A DNA stretch of 63,960 nucleotides, the filler included, from Octopus bimaculoides (taxonomy: Eukaryota): the NCBI RefSeq assembly GCF_001194135.2. It is 7 parts of 6 records of this genome, joined end to end, with 100 filler letters (N's around TTAATTAATTAA, not from the genome) between each part and the next. Parts side by side here need not be neighbours in the genome. Positions count along the whole stretch, not along the records: positions 4,566 to 31,892 come from NC_068987.1; 6 more parts are not named here. One strand, written 5' to 3'. This document shows positions 12,067 through 29,175 of this stretch, piece after piece. Positions within the stretch are counted from its first letter, which is position 1. The number at the start of each line of letters is the position of its first letter. The position numbers and the translations under genes are program-made. The notes beneath the pieces were generated by a model. That model was not told where the DNA came from. It saw only the letters and a list, made by a program, of their open reading frames with translations, and did not search any database.

Positions 12067-12097
<31 letters not shown>

Positions 12098-12703
12098 NNN
12101 NNNNNNNNNNNNNNNNNNNNNNNNNNNNNNNNNNNNNNNNNNNNNNNNNNNNNNNNNNNNNNNNNNNNNNNNNNNNNNNNNNNNNNNNNNNNNNNNNNNN
12201 NNNNNNNNNNNNNNNNNNNNNNNNNNNNNNNNNNNNNNNNNNNNNNNNNNNNNNNNNNNNNNNNNNNNNNNNNNNNNNNNNNNNNNNNNNNNNNNNNNNN
12301 NNNNNNNNNNNNNNNNNNNNNNNNNNNNNNNNNNNNNNNNNNNNNNNNNNNNNNNNNNNNNNNNNNNNNNNNNNNNNNNNNNNNNNNNNNNNNNNNNNNN
12401 NNNNNNNNNNNNNNNNNNNNNNNNNNNNNNNNNNNNNNNNNNNNNNNNNNNNNNNNNNNNNNNNNNNNNNNNNNNNNNNNNNNNNNNNNNNNNNNNNNNN
12501 NNNNNNNNNNNNNNNNNNNNNNNNNNNNNNNNNNNNNNNNNNNNNNNNNNNNNNNNNNNNNNNNNNNNNNNNNNNNNNNNNNNNNNNNNNNNNNNNNNNN
12601 NNNNNNNNNNNNNNNNNNNNNNNNNNNNNNNNNNNNNNNNNNNNNNNNNNNNNNNNNNNNNNNNNNNNNNNNNNNNNNNNNNNNNNNNNNNNNNNNNNNN
12701 NNN

Positions 12704-13260
12704 AAGTATATTTGCCATTTAAATGTGGCTGACCCCTAAGGGTGGATGATACTGTTGCTTTTAGCCCCAGGAGAACATCTCCTCCAGCTGGCTTATCGAC
12801 ACACATCTGTGTCCTGTCTATTTTTGCCAAGGGAAGTTATCCCTCCCCATCTTGATCTGCGATACGTTCGGACCCGTGTTTCAGGGTTATTTCCCTTCTT
12901 CAGCGTACGATAATCGCCGACCTTCGATGAGAAAGACAATCTCTTGGCAAAATATAAGTCTTTTTTCCAGTGAGGTTCTTCACTGATATCGAAAAAGTGA
13001 AAACAAGCAATGATAAATCTCTGAACGAGGTATTAACAGTAACTGCACGATGAAGTGAAGTATATTTGCCATTTGGGAGGGATAACCTCCCTTGGCAAAA
13101 ATAGACAGGACACAGATGTGTGTCGATAAGCCACCTGGAGGAGATGTTCTCCTGGGGCTAAAAGGAACAGTAACATCCACCCTTAGGGGTCAGCCACATT
13201 TAAATGGCAAATATACTTCACTTTATCGTGCAGTTACTGTTAATACCTCGTTCAGAGATT

Positions 13261-13261
<1 letters not shown>
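12704..13261 (-). mobile_element. Ribozyme-bearing fold-back element (Penelope pLTR / retrozyme-like, non-autonomous)
   Basis: 12704-12847 is the reverse complement of 13075-13218 (4 mismatches/144). 13015-13074 is the reverse complement of 13202-13261 (1 mismatch/60). HHR1 lies between them. Both flanks abut microsatellite/gap. Confidence 0.75.
12859..12917 (-). ncRNA. Type-I hammerhead ribozyme motif (HHR1)
   Basis: Minus strand reads GCGAU-UAU-CGUACG-CUGAAGA-AGGG-AAAUAA-CCCU-GAAA-C-ACGG-GUC/CGAACG-U-AUCGC. Intact core CUGAAGA/GAAA, 4-bp stem II, 2-bp stem III, GUC triplet, stem I 5/6 bp plus a 5-bp extension. Confidence 0.88.
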
Positions 13262-13299
<38 letters not shown>

Positions 13300-13815: not shown

Positions 13816-13881
<66 letters not shown>

Positions 13882-20994: not shown

Positions 20995-21373
20995 AGACGC
21001 AATGGCCCAATGGTTCGGGCAGCGGACTCGCAGTAATAGGAACGCGGTTTCGATTCCCAGACCGGGCTTTGTGAGTGTTTATTGAGCGAAAACACCTAAA
21101 GCTCCACGAGGCCCCGGCAGGGTGGTGGTGGCGAACCCTGCTGTACTCTTCCACCACAGCTTTCTCTCAATCTTACTTCCTAGTTCTGTTGTACCTGTAA
21201 TTCAAAGGGTCAGGCTTGTTGCACTGTGTCACGCTGAATATCCCCGAGAACTACGTTAAGGGTAAACGTGTCTGTGGTGTGCTCAGCCACTTGCACATTA
21301 ATTTCACGAGCAGGCTGTTCAGTTGATCGGATCAACTAGAACCCTCGACGTTGTAAGCGACGGAGTGCCAACA
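20993..21373 (+). mobile_element. tRNA-headed SINE, family B, full length, inserted in (GT)n
   Basis: ggagacgcaatggcccaatggtt..gtttcgattcc (A/B-box-like) head. 3' body shared with 43130-43398(-) and 4285-4465. Confidence 0.9.
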
Positions 21374-21779
21374 TGTGTGTGTGTGTGTGTGTGTGTGGAC
21401 GAATCTATTTAAATGTAGGGGTAATGCACAGATCCCATTTCAGTTTCATTGTGTTGTACCTTGGGGAAGTGTCTCCTACTGAAGCACTAGGCCGACAAAA
21501 TATGTGTGAGTAAATTTTGTTAACGGAAACTGAAACACGTACGACGTATAAATATGTGTTTGTGTGCGTGTGTGTGTGTGTATATATATGTGTGTACCTT
21601 TATGTATGTGTTTTCCACCACCCATACACCATCGCTAGCGTTGCTAATTCAAGTGTCCGTTATCGAGCGGTTCACGAATCAGGCGGATGCGAAAACACGG
21701 GAGGAAACGAGATGTTTAATGCAAAATGTGAAACAAGACAAACGTTGAATAAAAACCGGAGACAACAGCAAGAGTTGCT

Positions 21780-23220
21780 TCCCTTAGTCCGTAGAATGCA
21801 AAATTAACCTAGCTGGTGTAGTGCAATTCAATGGTGTTAATGTGAAAGTCTGTCACAGCTGTTCAATCCAGAGAGTATGGTGTACTCCAGTTCTACAGTA
21901 TTAATTTGCCCATGAGCTTGCATTGCCTTAACATTTTGAATCTGGAGTTAGATATGACGGTGGATCTAAATAATGTGCGATCTCTCATCTACACACAGCT
22001 TTCATCTATTTCAGCCATTTACATAAGGCGTAGATTTCACTACTGGATAGTAAATGTTCTGCAGTTTGATCTTTAGAGCTCATACGTCTTGTCCAACTTA
22101 GTGACTTTATTTTTATTTGTGTCTATGGGCCGGAGGGAAGACTGTCGGTTTGTATAACACATTCTAGTATTTCCTCTTCATAAACCGACATAATTTTTCC
22201 TTTCGTTTACGTTAATTTGGAACGCTTTTGTAACTTCACCATCATACTCGAAATTATACACGAGCGAGCAAGCTTCAGTTACATCTGGAAGTGGGCTCTT
22301 GGTGTGGATTGCGAGTGAAATGTCCTTCATAGTGAGGCAGCAGCTGTTTGATATTTCTATCGAAAGTCTATTAACTATCTTCCTGTAATTTTGGCCTAAT
22401 GCGAAATTTTCATCTAATAATACATGAACATTCTTGTCTACATTAGTTTTAACACTCAAGTAGAATGGGAGAGGTGCAAACCATATTAGTTTCCTTTGTC
22501 TATTTTTAAGATTCATATTTTAAAGAGTTGTAAGATATCTTATCTTTGAAGTCGCTGTCACCTAGAGCATAATTATTGAAGGAGACTGATTTATCAAATA
22601 TTTCTTTTAAGGAGCATATATCATGTAACTGATTTTACCAACACATTTTAAAACACTTTGGGAGGTGTCATAAGTGTCTTTATGTATATATGTAAGTTTC
22701 TCATTCGTTTCGTGATAGGCTTTACAAGACAGCAAGTTTTAGAGTAGAGAAATATTTTCCAAGAGTTCAATTTTGGACAAGCTAGAGCTTGCAATAATGG
22801 AAGGTCTAACTGACAACAGCTTTGTATGATTTTTCCCTAACATTTTCGTGTGTATCTTCGTTACAGTCACGGTATAGGTCAATATCGTGGAAGGGAAACT
22901 TGGATATCAATGCGTATAATATATACACACATACAAGATCACAAACGACCGTACTGTAATACGATCCCGTTGATACATTGATCAATTCACTTTCATAGAA
23001 TTTTTAAACACTTTGAGCCCTTACTGAATAGAAGTGTATTTTCTTTATACATGATAATGTTCGTGTCTATGTGGTCAATATAGCCATATTTTTGGCAAAT
23101 TCAGTCGCCTTTTCGAGCAACGATCTCGATAACGTGGGATAAAAATCTACAATATCAGACTGTAAGTTTAGCACTACCTATGACAGTGCTACTATCTGCC
23201 TATTCTTCTTGTGTAGTCGT
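21780..23220 (-). mobile_element. Decayed Penelope-like retroelement (RT + GIY-YIG endonuclease)
   Basis: Frameshifted minus-strand peptides in the expected order: QSDIVDFYPTLSRSLLEKATEFAK; NVSTGSYYSTVVCDLVCVYIL..DIDLYRD (YRDD region); ALGDSDFKDKISY; NRQRKLIWFAPLPFYLSVKTNV..KIVNRLSIEISNSC; SLVY..NYVGL (GIY-YIG). Confidence 0.85.
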
Positions 23221-23699
23221 CTCTGTGATCTGTTTTTTTTTTTTTTTTCTGTTAGTAAAACTACTTCAATCCCCGCTGAATTTATGTCTACAAGTGGGCT
23301 TATTACCGATATCTTAGATTAGTGTAATCTATCATTTTAACTAAGCATTTTAATCTCCCATCAATTTTACTTCATTTGGAGAGAAATTTAGCTTCATCGT
23401 TAATATTATCGCATATATCTATATATTAGCTTTGTTATATTTATTTAGTGGACGTGGTGTCATGCAGTAACTTACCACATAAAATCATTAGTGACTTCAT
23501 GCAGGTTATTGATCTTACCAGAAAATACAAACTTATATTTAGAACATTTAAAATTTCTAATACCAGATTGTAGTTCAACTTGAAAAGGGCTAGAGTACTT
23601 TCGGTATCTTATATTTGCTACTAAATCCAGAAGGTCTGCCTGAAAAGGGACTAAATGTTTTATATTGTGCAGGTATTTATGGGTTTTTAATTCATAGCT

Positions 23700-28376: not shown

Positions 28377-28590
28377 CCGGTAAAGTATCCGCTCATGTAC
28401 TTATTGTTTTCCTAAAATTTTCGTTGCGTCTTGCAATCTTTTCAATAGTCGTTGACTTGGATATAACGTGTGTAGCGTTTGATCGTCGAATTGACCATGA
28501 CAGAGAATGCTGAGCAGAGAATCTACATCAAATTTTGTCAAACGCTTGACAATACCTGCTCAAATGTCTGCGCAAAGTATTCAAAAAGTA
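28377..28590 (+). mobile_element. Mariner 5' end fragment, same family, opposite orientation
   Basis: MTENAEQRIYIKFCQTL. Shares gtgtgtagcgt..cgtcg.attgaccatgacagagaa.gctg with the minus-strand copy at about 28980-29030. Confidence 0.75.
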
Positions 28591-29175
28591 TTCATCGTTC
28601 TCGACACAATTAAGGGGTTTTTGTGAAACTGAAATCCAAGTGTCCTCTTGGTCAGCTGGTTGTAGTTTTGGCACAAACTTAGCAGACACGCATCTCACAC
28701 CCAAATCTCCAATGATAATGGGCACACCTGAACCGTAACGGATCTTCACAGATTTGCACAGATGGTTATTGGACGATTTCCTCACTGACAGCTGCACGAA
28801 CATCTGCAATATTTTTCTCAGTTTTGCTCGTTGCGGATCTCCCAGAACATTCGTTAATGTCGACATTTTCCCGGCAATCTCGCAAACGTCTGAAACCCTC
28901 TTACACTTGTGTGTGGCTCATACACTCTTCTCCATAACCTTTCTGCAACTTTGTGTTGGACTCTAAGCAGATATGGCTTTGACAGCTTTCTCTGTCATGG
29001 TCAATGCGACGTTCACACGCTACACACCTCCCTTCCAAGCACGGCAGTAAAGAGCAGAATTGAGGTAGAACGTTGAAATTTGGTGAGCATGGATAACAGA
29101 AGTCATGGTCAATCTTTGCCAAGCGATTTTACTCCACGTACCTTAGCTTCGTTACTATGCCAACAGCCCGGATAC
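28590..29175 (-). mobile_element. Mariner 5' half (HTH + WVPK-like linker)
   Basis: Peptides MTEKAVK.., IIIGDLGVRCVSAKFVPKL..ENDEYFLNT. Confidence 0.8.

What the first reader, a model, noticed from the sequence alone, without database searches (positions are those of the whole stretch)
12859..12917. Complete type-I hammerhead ribozyme hidden between two assembly gaps
Seen: the minus strand folds into a canonical hammerhead (CUGAAGA, AGGG/CCCU stem II, GAAA, AC/GU stem III, GUC cleavage triplet, stem I CGUACG/CGAACG plus GCGAU/AUCGC extension). Predicted cleavage is between plus-strand 12871 and 12870. Known: short-stem-III type-I hammerheads occur in Penelope-like element pLTRs and in metazoan non-LTR retrozymes, and often cleave as dimers. 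Inference: a recently functional self-cleaving RNA in a cephalopod repeat. Whether this family is described cannot be checked here.
Basis: partly seen in the sequence, partly recalled or inferred. Interest (0 to 1): 0.88.

Follow-up and report, generated by a model that had tools for sequence, protein, structure and literature searches.

The report
Hammerhead ribozyme in a retrozyme-like repeat
The reported self-cleaving hammerhead RNA motif is really there and sits in a short non-coding mobile repeat of an already known kind (animal "retrozymes", thought to be moved by Penelope-like elements), so it is a sound but fairly ordinary find.

Summary
On the minus strand, 12917..12859 encodes a complete type-I hammerhead with predicted cleavage between 12871 and 12870. 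A strict canonical descriptor hits only this site and gives 0 hits in 30 Mb of null sequence. A covariance model built only from four experimentally validated coral, mussel and axolotl retrozyme ribozymes finds it as the single clear hit (24.8 bits, E~3e-5). Rfam misses it, but a control shows Rfam also misses 6 of 8 contigs with clear hammerheads of this architecture.

The motif lies in a 354-nt, ORF-free, 43% GC unit that closes on itself and folds into a stable rod. The island shows a partial upstream copy, an adjacent inverted 5'-truncated copy and a (CA)n boundary. That is the published insertion signature of Penelope-like-element machinery.

The best reading is a new sequence family of the known metazoan non-LTR retrozyme class.

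Limits:
- Only one ribozyme copy is visible.
- No other genomic copies or expression data could be reached.
- The organism could not be identified.
- This copy deviates from the norm: A10.1-U11.1, one A.A mismatch in helix I, and a broken helix III palindrome.
- Activity of this copy is unproven.

Interest is modest.

The parts
12859..12917 (-). Complete type-I hammerhead ribozyme motif: closing stem, loop 1, helix I, core, helix II, helix III and the cleavage triplet GUC
   Evidence: Sequence reading; descriptor scans; model R1 hit at 12865-12909(-), 24.8 bits, E=3.4e-5
12870..12871 (-). Predicted self-cleavage site: 3' of C17 (12871), 5' of C1.1 (12870)
   Evidence: Position of GUC relative to helices III and I. 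Inferred, not assayed
12897..12903 (-). Core strand CUGAAGA (C3-A9, N7=A)
12883..12896 (-). Helix II AGGG/CCCU (A10.1-U11.1 at its base) with 6-nt loop 2 AAAUAA
   Evidence: pair probabilities 0.98-1.0; loop 2 resembles the Rfam RF00163 consensus CAAAUA
12872..12882 (-). GAA, then helix III (A15.1-U16.1, C15.2-G16.2) capped by tetraloop ACGG. One change away from the palindrome ACACGUGU of axolotl Ax353
12704..13010 (-). Main copy of the 354-nt unit in ribozyme-sense orientation: Z' (13010..12848, holding the ribozyme) followed by X' (12847..12704). It runs into the assembly gap
13011..13074 (-). Partial upstream copy (last 17 nt of X' plus the 47-nt Y') joined head-to-tail to the main copy. 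It shows that the unit closes at 354 nt (pLTR-like partial tandem)
   Evidence: Direct repeat 12704-12720 = 13058-13074, spacing 354; junction alignment 62/64 identical to the inverted copy
13075..13265 (+). Inverted, 5'-truncated copy (X'Y' only, no ribozyme), 97% identical to the main copy. Its 3' end abuts the microsatellite
   Evidence: Inverted repeats I1 and I2; alignments
13263..13299 (.). (AC)n microsatellite at the element boundary, the probable insertion target; followed by the assembly gap
   Evidence: PLE microsatellite bias in PMC8557442

Best explanation
The island is an insertion of a short (354 nt), non-coding, non-autonomous retroelement of the metazoan 'non-LTR retrozyme' class. 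It carries a canonical type-I hammerhead ribozyme on the minus strand.

Proposed mechanism (inferred from published work on this class, not shown here):
1. Transcripts running through head-to-tail copies fold the hammerhead and cut themselves after GUC (12871|12870).
2. [quoted passage not shown]
3. A host RtcB-type tRNA ligase circularises that RNA into a stable, rod-like circRNA.
4. The reverse transcriptase/endonuclease of an autonomous Penelope-like element copies the RNA and integrates it.
5. Integration leaves the anatomy seen here: a partial upstream copy, an adjacent inverted 5'-truncated copy and a microsatellite target.

What is shown here is the motif, its fit to validated ribozymes, the unit architecture and the fold. 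Cleavage, circularisation, mobilisation by a PLE and activity of this particular copy are inferred.
For: - Motif: all core positions and the three helices are present, with the canonical sizes given in PMC4209133: helix I 6 bp, helix II 4 bp, helix III 1-2 bp plus a 2-4 nt loop.
- Chance: 0 hits of the strict descriptor in 30 Mb of null sequence.
- Independent model: R1, built only from the validated coral Amil224, mussel Mg353 and axolotl Ax353/Ax330 ribozymes (supplement of PMC7229834), finds the site as the single clear hit. It scores 24.8 bits, E=3.4e-5; the next best is 12.1 bits.
- Template support: nine distinct environmental ribozymes fetched with a pattern that left the helices free share the loop 1 (UAY/U) and loop 2 layout. 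Together with the window they give 80% paired cells against 25-41% in slid controls, and 15 of 17 pairs show double changes.
- Unit: 354 nt, no ORF, 43% GC. It closes on itself (spacing 354) and folds at -101.7 kcal/mol as a circle (z=-3.2), with helix I extended into a rod. These traits match those described for retrozymes (PMC7229834, PMC7761336).
- Insertion anatomy: partial tandem, inverted 5'-truncated copy, (CA)n boundary and assembly breaks, as described for PLE insertions (PMC8557442).
- Helix III (2 bp plus tetraloop) is the form described as typical of invertebrate retrozyme hammerheads.
Against: - Only one ribozyme copy is visible. The tandem claim rests on a 64-nt overlap, and both flanks are assembly gaps.
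- No other genomic copies could be retrieved, so there is no within-family conservation or covariation and no copy-number estimate.
- Rfam hammerhead models do not report the site even at E<=10 on 91 nt. The control shows RF00163 also misses 6 of 8 contigs with clear hammerheads of this type.
- This copy has A10.1-U11.1, where G-C is 'highly conserved' (PMC4209133).
- It also has an A.A mismatch in helix I and a weak dimer helix III.
- The nearest-neighbour MFE prefers an inactive pairing (-17.5 vs -10.8 kcal/mol). The validated mussel ribozyme shows a similar gap, so this point is weak.
- There are no expression or cleavage data, and no PLE was seen in the piece.
Confidence: 0.75

Rival explanations
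1. The ribozyme belongs to the pseudo-LTR of an autonomous Penelope-like element, and the reverse-transcriptase/GIY-YIG ORF is hidden in the adjacent assembly gap.
For: PLEs carry hammerheads in their pLTRs and insert as partial tandems with inverted 5'-truncated copies at microsatellites (PMC4209133, PMC8557442), which matches the island's anatomy. Retrozymes and pLTRs are reported to be related in sequence in Xenopus (bioRxiv 10.64898/2026.07.22.740005).
Against: - All three junctions of the unit are seen and close it at 354 nt, leaving no room for an ORF.
- The flanking gaps are scaffolded at about 600 and 500 N, which is too short for a 3-4 kb PLE if those sizes are roughly right.
- Metazoan PLE ribozymes are usually 'minimal': no helix III, helix II of 6-8 bp, short helix I and an extra nucleotide before 10.1. 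This one is canonical.
- No convincing RT or endonuclease ORF appears in the piece.
Confidence: 0.1
2. It is a dead relic. The repeat once carried an active hammerhead, but this copy no longer cleaves, and the locus is inert repetitive DNA.
For: The copy has A10.1-U11.1 instead of G-C, an A.A mismatch at the third pair of helix I, and a helix III palindrome broken by one base. That break leaves the dimer helix at -4.8 kcal/mol against -11.7 when repaired. The R1 score of 24.8 bits is at the low end of the 27-47 bits of the environmental ribozymes. Only one ribozyme is visible at the locus.
Against: All 15 core positions are intact. A10.1-U11.1 is still a Watson-Crick pair and helix II keeps 4 of 4 pairs. 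The two copies in the island are about 97% identical, which suggests a young insertion. The validated mussel ribozyme has a comparable MFE handicap.
Confidence: 0.35
3. It is a chance hammerhead-like motif in an unrelated repeat, or an assembly artefact.
For: The genome is large, and loose descriptors give about 0.018 hits per 25 kb. The island is a 596-bp contig between gaps, and its fold-back could be a short-read chimera.
Against: The strict geometry gives 0 hits in 30 Mb of null sequence. The loop 1/loop 2 layout and all helix sizes equal those of real ribozymes. An independent model gives E~3e-5. The unit size, GC content, lack of an ORF, rod-like fold and PLE-type insertion anatomy all point the same way. 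A mis-assembly would not create the motif itself.
Confidence: 0.05

Closest known systems
Metazoan non-LTR retrozymes (Cervera & de la Pena 2020, NAR, PMC7229834), e.g. mussel Mytilus galloprovincialis Rtz Mg353 and axolotl Rtz Ax353
   Same: - Unit length about 350 nt (here 354), with no ORF and GC below 50% (43%).
- Head-to-tail organisation.
- Canonical type-I hammerhead: helix I 6 bp, helix II 4 bp, helix III 2 bp plus a tetraloop. The mussel reads GAAAC-GCGC-GUC, axolotl Ax353 GAAAC-ACGU-GUA, and this locus GAAAC-ACGG-GUC.
- The monomer is highly self-paired.
   Different: - No sequence homology outside the ribozyme.
- Only about 1.2 units are visible, not a long array.
- A10.1-U11.1 replaces G-C, and the helix III loop is not palindromic.
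- Expression as circRNA is not shown, and the organism is unknown.
Penelope-like element pLTR hammerheads ('min-HHRs', Cervera & de la Pena 2014, PMC4209133) and PLE insertion structure (Craig et al. 2021, PMC8557442)
   Same: Type-I topology. The insertion anatomy also matches: a partial tandem copy, an adjacent inverted 5'-truncated copy, a microsatellite boundary, and broken short-read assembly.
   Different: There is no RT/GIY-YIG ORF. The ribozyme is canonical rather than minimal: helix III is present, helix II is 4 bp rather than 6-8 bp, there is no extra nucleotide before 10.1, and helix I is 6 bp with a defined loop 1.
Rfam RF00163 Hammerhead_1 (Schistosoma Sm-alpha type) and classic satellite-DNA hammerheads (newt satellite 2, schistosome Sm-alpha)
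   Same: Same 45-nt layout as the RF00163 consensus aUccagCUGAcGAGUCCCAAAUAGGACGAAACGcgCGUCcuggAu: 6-bp helix I, 4-bp helix II, A-rich 6-nt loop 2 and a very short helix III. It also resides in repetitive DNA.
   Different: It does not reach any reportable RF00163 score. Helix II has a different sequence (AGGG/CCCU against GUCC/GGAC) and N7 is A.

Membership tests
Hammerhead ribozyme, type I | Conserved catalytic core: CUGANGA, GAAA with the A15.1-U16.1 pair, and cleavage triplet NUH | tested here: met
   CUGAAGA 12903-12897; GAAA 12882-12879; GUC 12873-12871
Hammerhead ribozyme, type I | Three helices around the core, with helix I open-ended (type I). Canonical metazoan sizes: helix I 6 bp, helix II 4 bp, helix III 1-2 bp plus a 2-4 nt loop (PMC4209133) | tested here: met
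   Helix I has 5 of 6 pairs plus a 5-bp closing stem; helix II 4 of 4; helix III 2 bp plus a 4-nt loop. The strict descriptor gives 0 hits in 30 Mb of null sequence
Hammerhead ribozyme, type I | Score at or above the Rfam RF00163 gathering threshold (34 bits) | tested here: not met
   No hammerhead family is reported at gathering or at E<=10, even on 91 nt. In the control, RF00163 detects only 2 of 8 contigs with clear hammerheads of this architecture, so this test has low sensitivity
Hammerhead ribozyme, type I | Match to a covariance model of experimentally validated type-I ribozymes | tested here: met
   R1 (coral, mussel and two axolotl ribozymes): 24.8 bits, E=3.4e-5, the top hit in 27 kb with filters off. 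E-values are rough because calibration is shortened
Hammerhead ribozyme, type I | G10.1-C11.1 base pair, highly conserved in canonical hammerheads (PMC4209133) | tested here: not met
   Here the pair is A10.1-U11.1 (12896/12883). All 9 environmental relatives have G-C
Hammerhead ribozyme, type I | Loop 1 / loop 2 nucleotides for the tertiary contact | tested here: inconclusive
   Loop 1 is UAU opposite U and loop 2 is AAAUAA. This is the same layout as several environmental ribozymes (UAY/U) and close to the RF00163 loop CAAAUA. The three-dimensional contact itself cannot be tested here
Hammerhead ribozyme, type I | Site-specific self-cleavage | not testable with these tools
   Needs in vitro transcription or RNA end mapping
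Hammerhead ribozyme, type I | Conservation or covariation of helices among genomic copies of the same element family | not testable with these tools
   There is no second ribozyme copy in the piece. Protein-handle and collection searches gave no copies of the unit. Covariation is shown only at class level
Metazoan non-LTR retrozyme | Short (about 170-400 nt) non-coding unit with GC below 50% | tested here: met
   354 nt, stops in all six frames, GC 43%
Metazoan non-LTR retrozyme | Head-to-tail (tandem) repetition, so that two ribozymes flank a unit | tested here: inconclusive
   The unit closes on itself (spacing 354; 64-nt partial upstream copy), but only one ribozyme is visible and the continuation lies in the gap
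Metazoan non-LTR retrozyme | Stable, highly self-paired monomer RNA | tested here: met
   Circular MFE -101.7 kcal/mol, z=-3.2, 63% paired, helix I extended into a rod
Metazoan non-LTR retrozyme | Expression as unit-length linear and circular RNA | not testable with these tools
   No transcriptome data are available here
Autonomous Penelope-like element (pLTR hammerhead) | RT plus GIY-YIG ORF between the repeats | tested here: not met
   The unit closes at 354 nt without an ORF. No such ORF or Pfam hit was seen among the ORFs of the piece. The gaps are not visible
Autonomous Penelope-like element (pLTR hammerhead) | Minimal hammerhead architecture (no helix III, long helix II, short helix I, bulge before 10.1) | tested here: not met
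   Canonical architecture instead
Autonomous Penelope-like element (pLTR hammerhead) | Insertion anatomy: partial tandem, adjacent inverted 5'-truncated copy, microsatellite target | tested here: met
   compared with PMC8557442. This supports integration by PLE machinery, not autonomy

The most novel reading that the evidence does not exclude
This may be a live member of an undescribed retrozyme family in this (reportedly cephalopod) genome. It would make 354-nt circular RNAs, work with an unusual A10.1-U11.1 base of helix II, and show in its insertion anatomy (partial tandem, inverted 5'-truncated copy, microsatellite target) locus-level evidence that retrozymes are integrated by Penelope-like-element machinery.
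Probability: 0.3. Interest if true: 0.45.

Novelty: new member of a known kind. Interest (0 to 1): 0.3.

Why it matters
If this copy is active, it adds a further lineage and a distinct sequence family to the catalogue of genome-encoded circRNA-forming retrozymes. [quoted passage not shown] The locus also shows two practical points. Rfam's type-I hammerhead model misses many genuine ribozymes of this architecture, and such elements sit at short-read assembly breaks. Both mean they are under-annotated. None of this changes the current picture of the class.

Tried and rejected
1. Rfam at gathering on the whole piece, at E<=10 on 601 nt and at E<=10 on 91 nt gave no hammerhead family. The sub-threshold MIR2670 and SCARNA7 hits are artefacts of the long inverted repeat and the (AC)n run.
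2. I fished for other copies with a concatenate of the unit's open frames against the 5.8-billion-protein collection and found nothing.
3. I tried two decayed transposon-like ORFs of the piece as handles to reach the same genome: no homologues and no Pfam support. An exact look-up of a window ORF also found nothing on record. The organism therefore stays unidentified.
4. An exact-stem pattern of the ribozyme in metagenome contigs gave 0 hits.
5. The relaxed pattern found real type-I hammerheads, but none is homologous to the unit outside the ribozyme. The three MAG hits and L012 are not hammerheads (helix II 0-2 of 4 pairs).
6. I tested a tRNA-derived SINE origin and found no tRNA-like sequence.
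7. I tested homology to the published mussel, axolotl and coral retrozymes and found none beyond the core.
8. I considered the MFE argument against the hammerhead fold and dropped it, because the validated mussel ribozyme shows the same handicap.

Full report
**Observation.** The minus strand of 12917..12859 reads GCGAU-UAU-CGUACG-CUGAAGA-AGGG-AAAUAA-CCCU-GAAA-C-ACGG-GUC-CGAACG-U-AUCGC. This is a complete type-I hammerhead.
- Helix I is 6 bp with one A.A mismatch (12906/12868). It is followed by an internal loop (UAU opposite U) and a 5-bp closing stem.
- The core is CUGANGA...GAAA.
- Helix II is 4 bp with a 6-nt loop.
- Helix III consists only of A15.1-U16.1 and C15.2-G16.2, capped by ACGG.
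- The island 12704-13299 lies between N runs.

**Is it more than chance?**
- A loose descriptor of my own finds exactly one hit in the 27-kb piece, at this site. Over 1500 dinucleotide-preserving shuffles it gives 0.018 hits per 25 kb.
- That alone would not be convincing for a gigabase genome, so I also used a strict descriptor encoding the published 'canonical metazoan type-I' geometry: helix I 6 bp, helix II 4 bp, helix III 1-2 bp with a 2-4 nt loop (PMC4209133), plus an internal loop and closing stem.
- The strict descriptor hits the site and gives 0 hits in 30 Mb of first-order Markov null sequence on both strands.

**Rfam.**
- No hammerhead family is reported at gathering thresholds on the piece, at E<=10 on 601 nt, or at E<=10 on 91 nt. 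I report this as a failed membership test.
- A control shows how little it weighs. On eight metagenome contigs that carry clear type-I hammerheads of this architecture, RF00163 reaches its threshold only for the two whose helix II is exactly the Schistosoma-like GUCC/GGAC.
- The other six score 27-47 bits with my independent model.

**Independent model.**
- The supplement of Cervera & de la Pena 2020 (PMC7229834) prints four retrozyme clones whose hammerheads were assayed in vitro: coral Amil224, mussel Mg353, and axolotl Ax353 and Ax330.
- I aligned only their ribozyme cores (A1), supplied the hammerhead structure, and built model R1.
- Searched over the piece with filters off, R1 gives one clear hit, 12865-12909(-), at 24.8 bits and E=3.4e-5. 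The next best hit is 12.1 bits at E=0.19. E-values from this shortened calibration are rough.

**Class-level structure.**
- I scanned for a pattern that fixes the core, loop 2 (AAAUAA) and the size of helix III but leaves helices I and II free. It returned 13 metagenome contigs and 3 MAG contigs.
- Twelve of the 13 metagenome hits, nine of them distinct sequences, are recognised by R1. Their helix II pairs at 3-4 of 4 positions and helix I mostly at 4-6 of 6, with different sequences.
- Several have the same loop 1 layout as the window: UAY on the 5' side opposite a single U, then a closing stem.
- L012 and the three MAG hits pair at 0-2 of 4 positions in helix II and are not hammerheads.
- On the alignment of the window plus the nine distinct ribozymes (A2), 80% of cells form standard pairs against 25-41% when partners are slid. 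Fifteen of 17 pairs show changes on both sides, and no shuffle out of 500 reaches the observed covariation score.
- This supports the structural template the window sequence fits. It is not covariation within the window's own repeat family.

**Deviations of this copy.**
- The base of helix II is A10.1-U11.1. G-C is described as highly conserved and is present in all nine relatives.
- Helix I has one A.A mismatch. A single A-to-U change at 12868 would make it a perfect CGUACG/CGUACG helix.
- Helix III plus its loop reads ACACGGGU, one change away from the perfect palindrome ACACGUGU of axolotl Ax353.
- As a result the inter-molecular 'dimer' helix III is weak: -4.8 kcal/mol, against -11.7 when repaired, -12.3 for Ax353 and -14.7 for the mussel.
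- The nearest-neighbour MFE of the 62-nt motif prefers a shifted, inactive pairing (-17.5 vs -10.8 kcal/mol). The validated mussel ribozyme shows the same kind of gap (-13.1 vs -5.7), so I give this little weight.

**Context.** The island has a clear architecture. Read in ribozyme-sense orientation, on the minus strand from 13299 downwards, it contains in order:
- (TG)n.
- An inverted, 5'-truncated copy (13075-13265 on the plus strand) that holds only the last 191 nt of the unit. Its 3' end, ...CAGAGATTTAACA, runs into the microsatellite.
- A 64-nt partial upstream copy (13074..13011).
- A copy that starts at the unit's 5' end (13010), contains the ribozyme (cleavage after unit position 140) and runs into the gap at 12703.

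Further points on the unit:
- Each of the three junctions is seen at least once, so the unit closes at 354 nt. The direct repeat 12704-12720 = 13058-13074 has a spacing of 354.
- The two copies are about 97% identical.
- The unit has stops in all six frames, 43% GC against 25-35% in the flanks, and no tRNA-like part.
- As a circle it folds at -101.7 kcal/mol (z=-3.2), with helix I continuing into a long rod.

**Comparison with what is known.**
- Unit size, low GC, absence of an ORF, a canonical type-I hammerhead with a 2-bp/tetraloop helix III, and a highly self-paired monomer are the traits given for metazoan non-LTR retrozymes. Published examples are mussel repeats of 350-390 bp and axolotl repeats of 330 and 350 bp (PMC7229834, PMC7761336).
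- Those RNAs are cut by the ribozyme, circularised mainly by RtcB-type ligase and accumulate as circRNAs. Mobilisation by Penelope-like elements has been proposed and is supported by co-occurrence and pLTR similarity.
- Craig et al. 2021 (PMC8557442) describe PLE insertions as partial tandems, often with an inverted 5'-truncated copy adjacent upstream. They are biased to microsatellites and troublesome for short-read assemblies. This island shows exactly that.
- The ribozyme is not of the 'minimal' PLE-pLTR type, and the unit leaves no room for an RT ORF. I therefore file it as a non-autonomous retrozyme-type element, probably integrated by PLE machinery, and not as a PLE.
- It has no homology to the published mussel, axolotl or coral retrozymes outside the core.
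- I found no paper in the held library that links retrozymes or hammerheads to cephalopods beyond incidental mentions.

**Limits.**
- I could not reach other genomic copies, because the three protein-based handles, the exact look-up and the collection scans all failed.
- So within-family conservation, copy number, the organism and expression remain untested.
- Whether this particular copy cleaves is open. I put it at roughly even odds, while the identification of the motif and its class is firm.

**Verdict.** This is a new sequence family of a known class, and the interest is modest.

Noticed in passing
window 21228-21278 (+), inside a GC-richer block at about 21100-21375 that ends at a (TG)n run, 21375-21397: Second-best hit of the hammerhead model (12.1 bits, E=0.19). 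It has a hammerhead-like layout, but two core positions are broken (CUGAAUA instead of CUGANGA; UAAAC instead of GAAAC). It may be a decayed ribozyme in another short element that also abuts a microsatellite. The block is single-copy in the piece and unrelated to the 354-nt unit.
   Followed up: partly
window about 21800-23300 (-), including ORF 22178-22516: Frame-shifted remnants of a repeat-encoded protein (motifs ...DIVDFYPTLS......RKLIWFAPLP......ISNSC......KNYVGL). From memory they resemble a widespread invertebrate family with a GIY-YIG-like end. There was no Pfam hit and no homologue in the protein collection.
   Followed up: partly
window 12069-12097, 13263-13299, 13816-13878 and other gap edges: The assembly gaps around the island are bounded by microsatellites: (TA)n before the left gap, (AC)n before the right gap and (AG)n after it. 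The whole piece is dense in di- and tetranucleotide repeats and is about 35% GC.
   Followed up: no
window 13042-13234 (+): Sub-threshold Rfam hit to the plant miRNA family MIR2670 (28 bits against a gathering score of 117). It is explained by the near-perfect hairpin formed by the partial upstream copy and the inverted copy, not by a miRNA.
   Followed up: yes
L002-L008, L010, L013 (metagenome contigs, e.g. L004 73-117, L008 1646-1690): Clear canonical type-I hammerheads in low-GC, probably eukaryotic, metagenome contigs. Of the eight contigs put through Rfam, RF00163 missed six at its gathering score and detected only those with helix II GUCC/GGAC. L005 carries a second hammerhead-model match (1125-1173, 20.9 bits) about 770 nt from the first.
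   Followed up: partly
window 28528-28866 (-): A 112-aa ORF that by eye resembles the N-terminal region of a mariner-type transposase (...VSAKFVPKL...). It has no Pfam hit and no homologue in the collection.
   Followed up: partly
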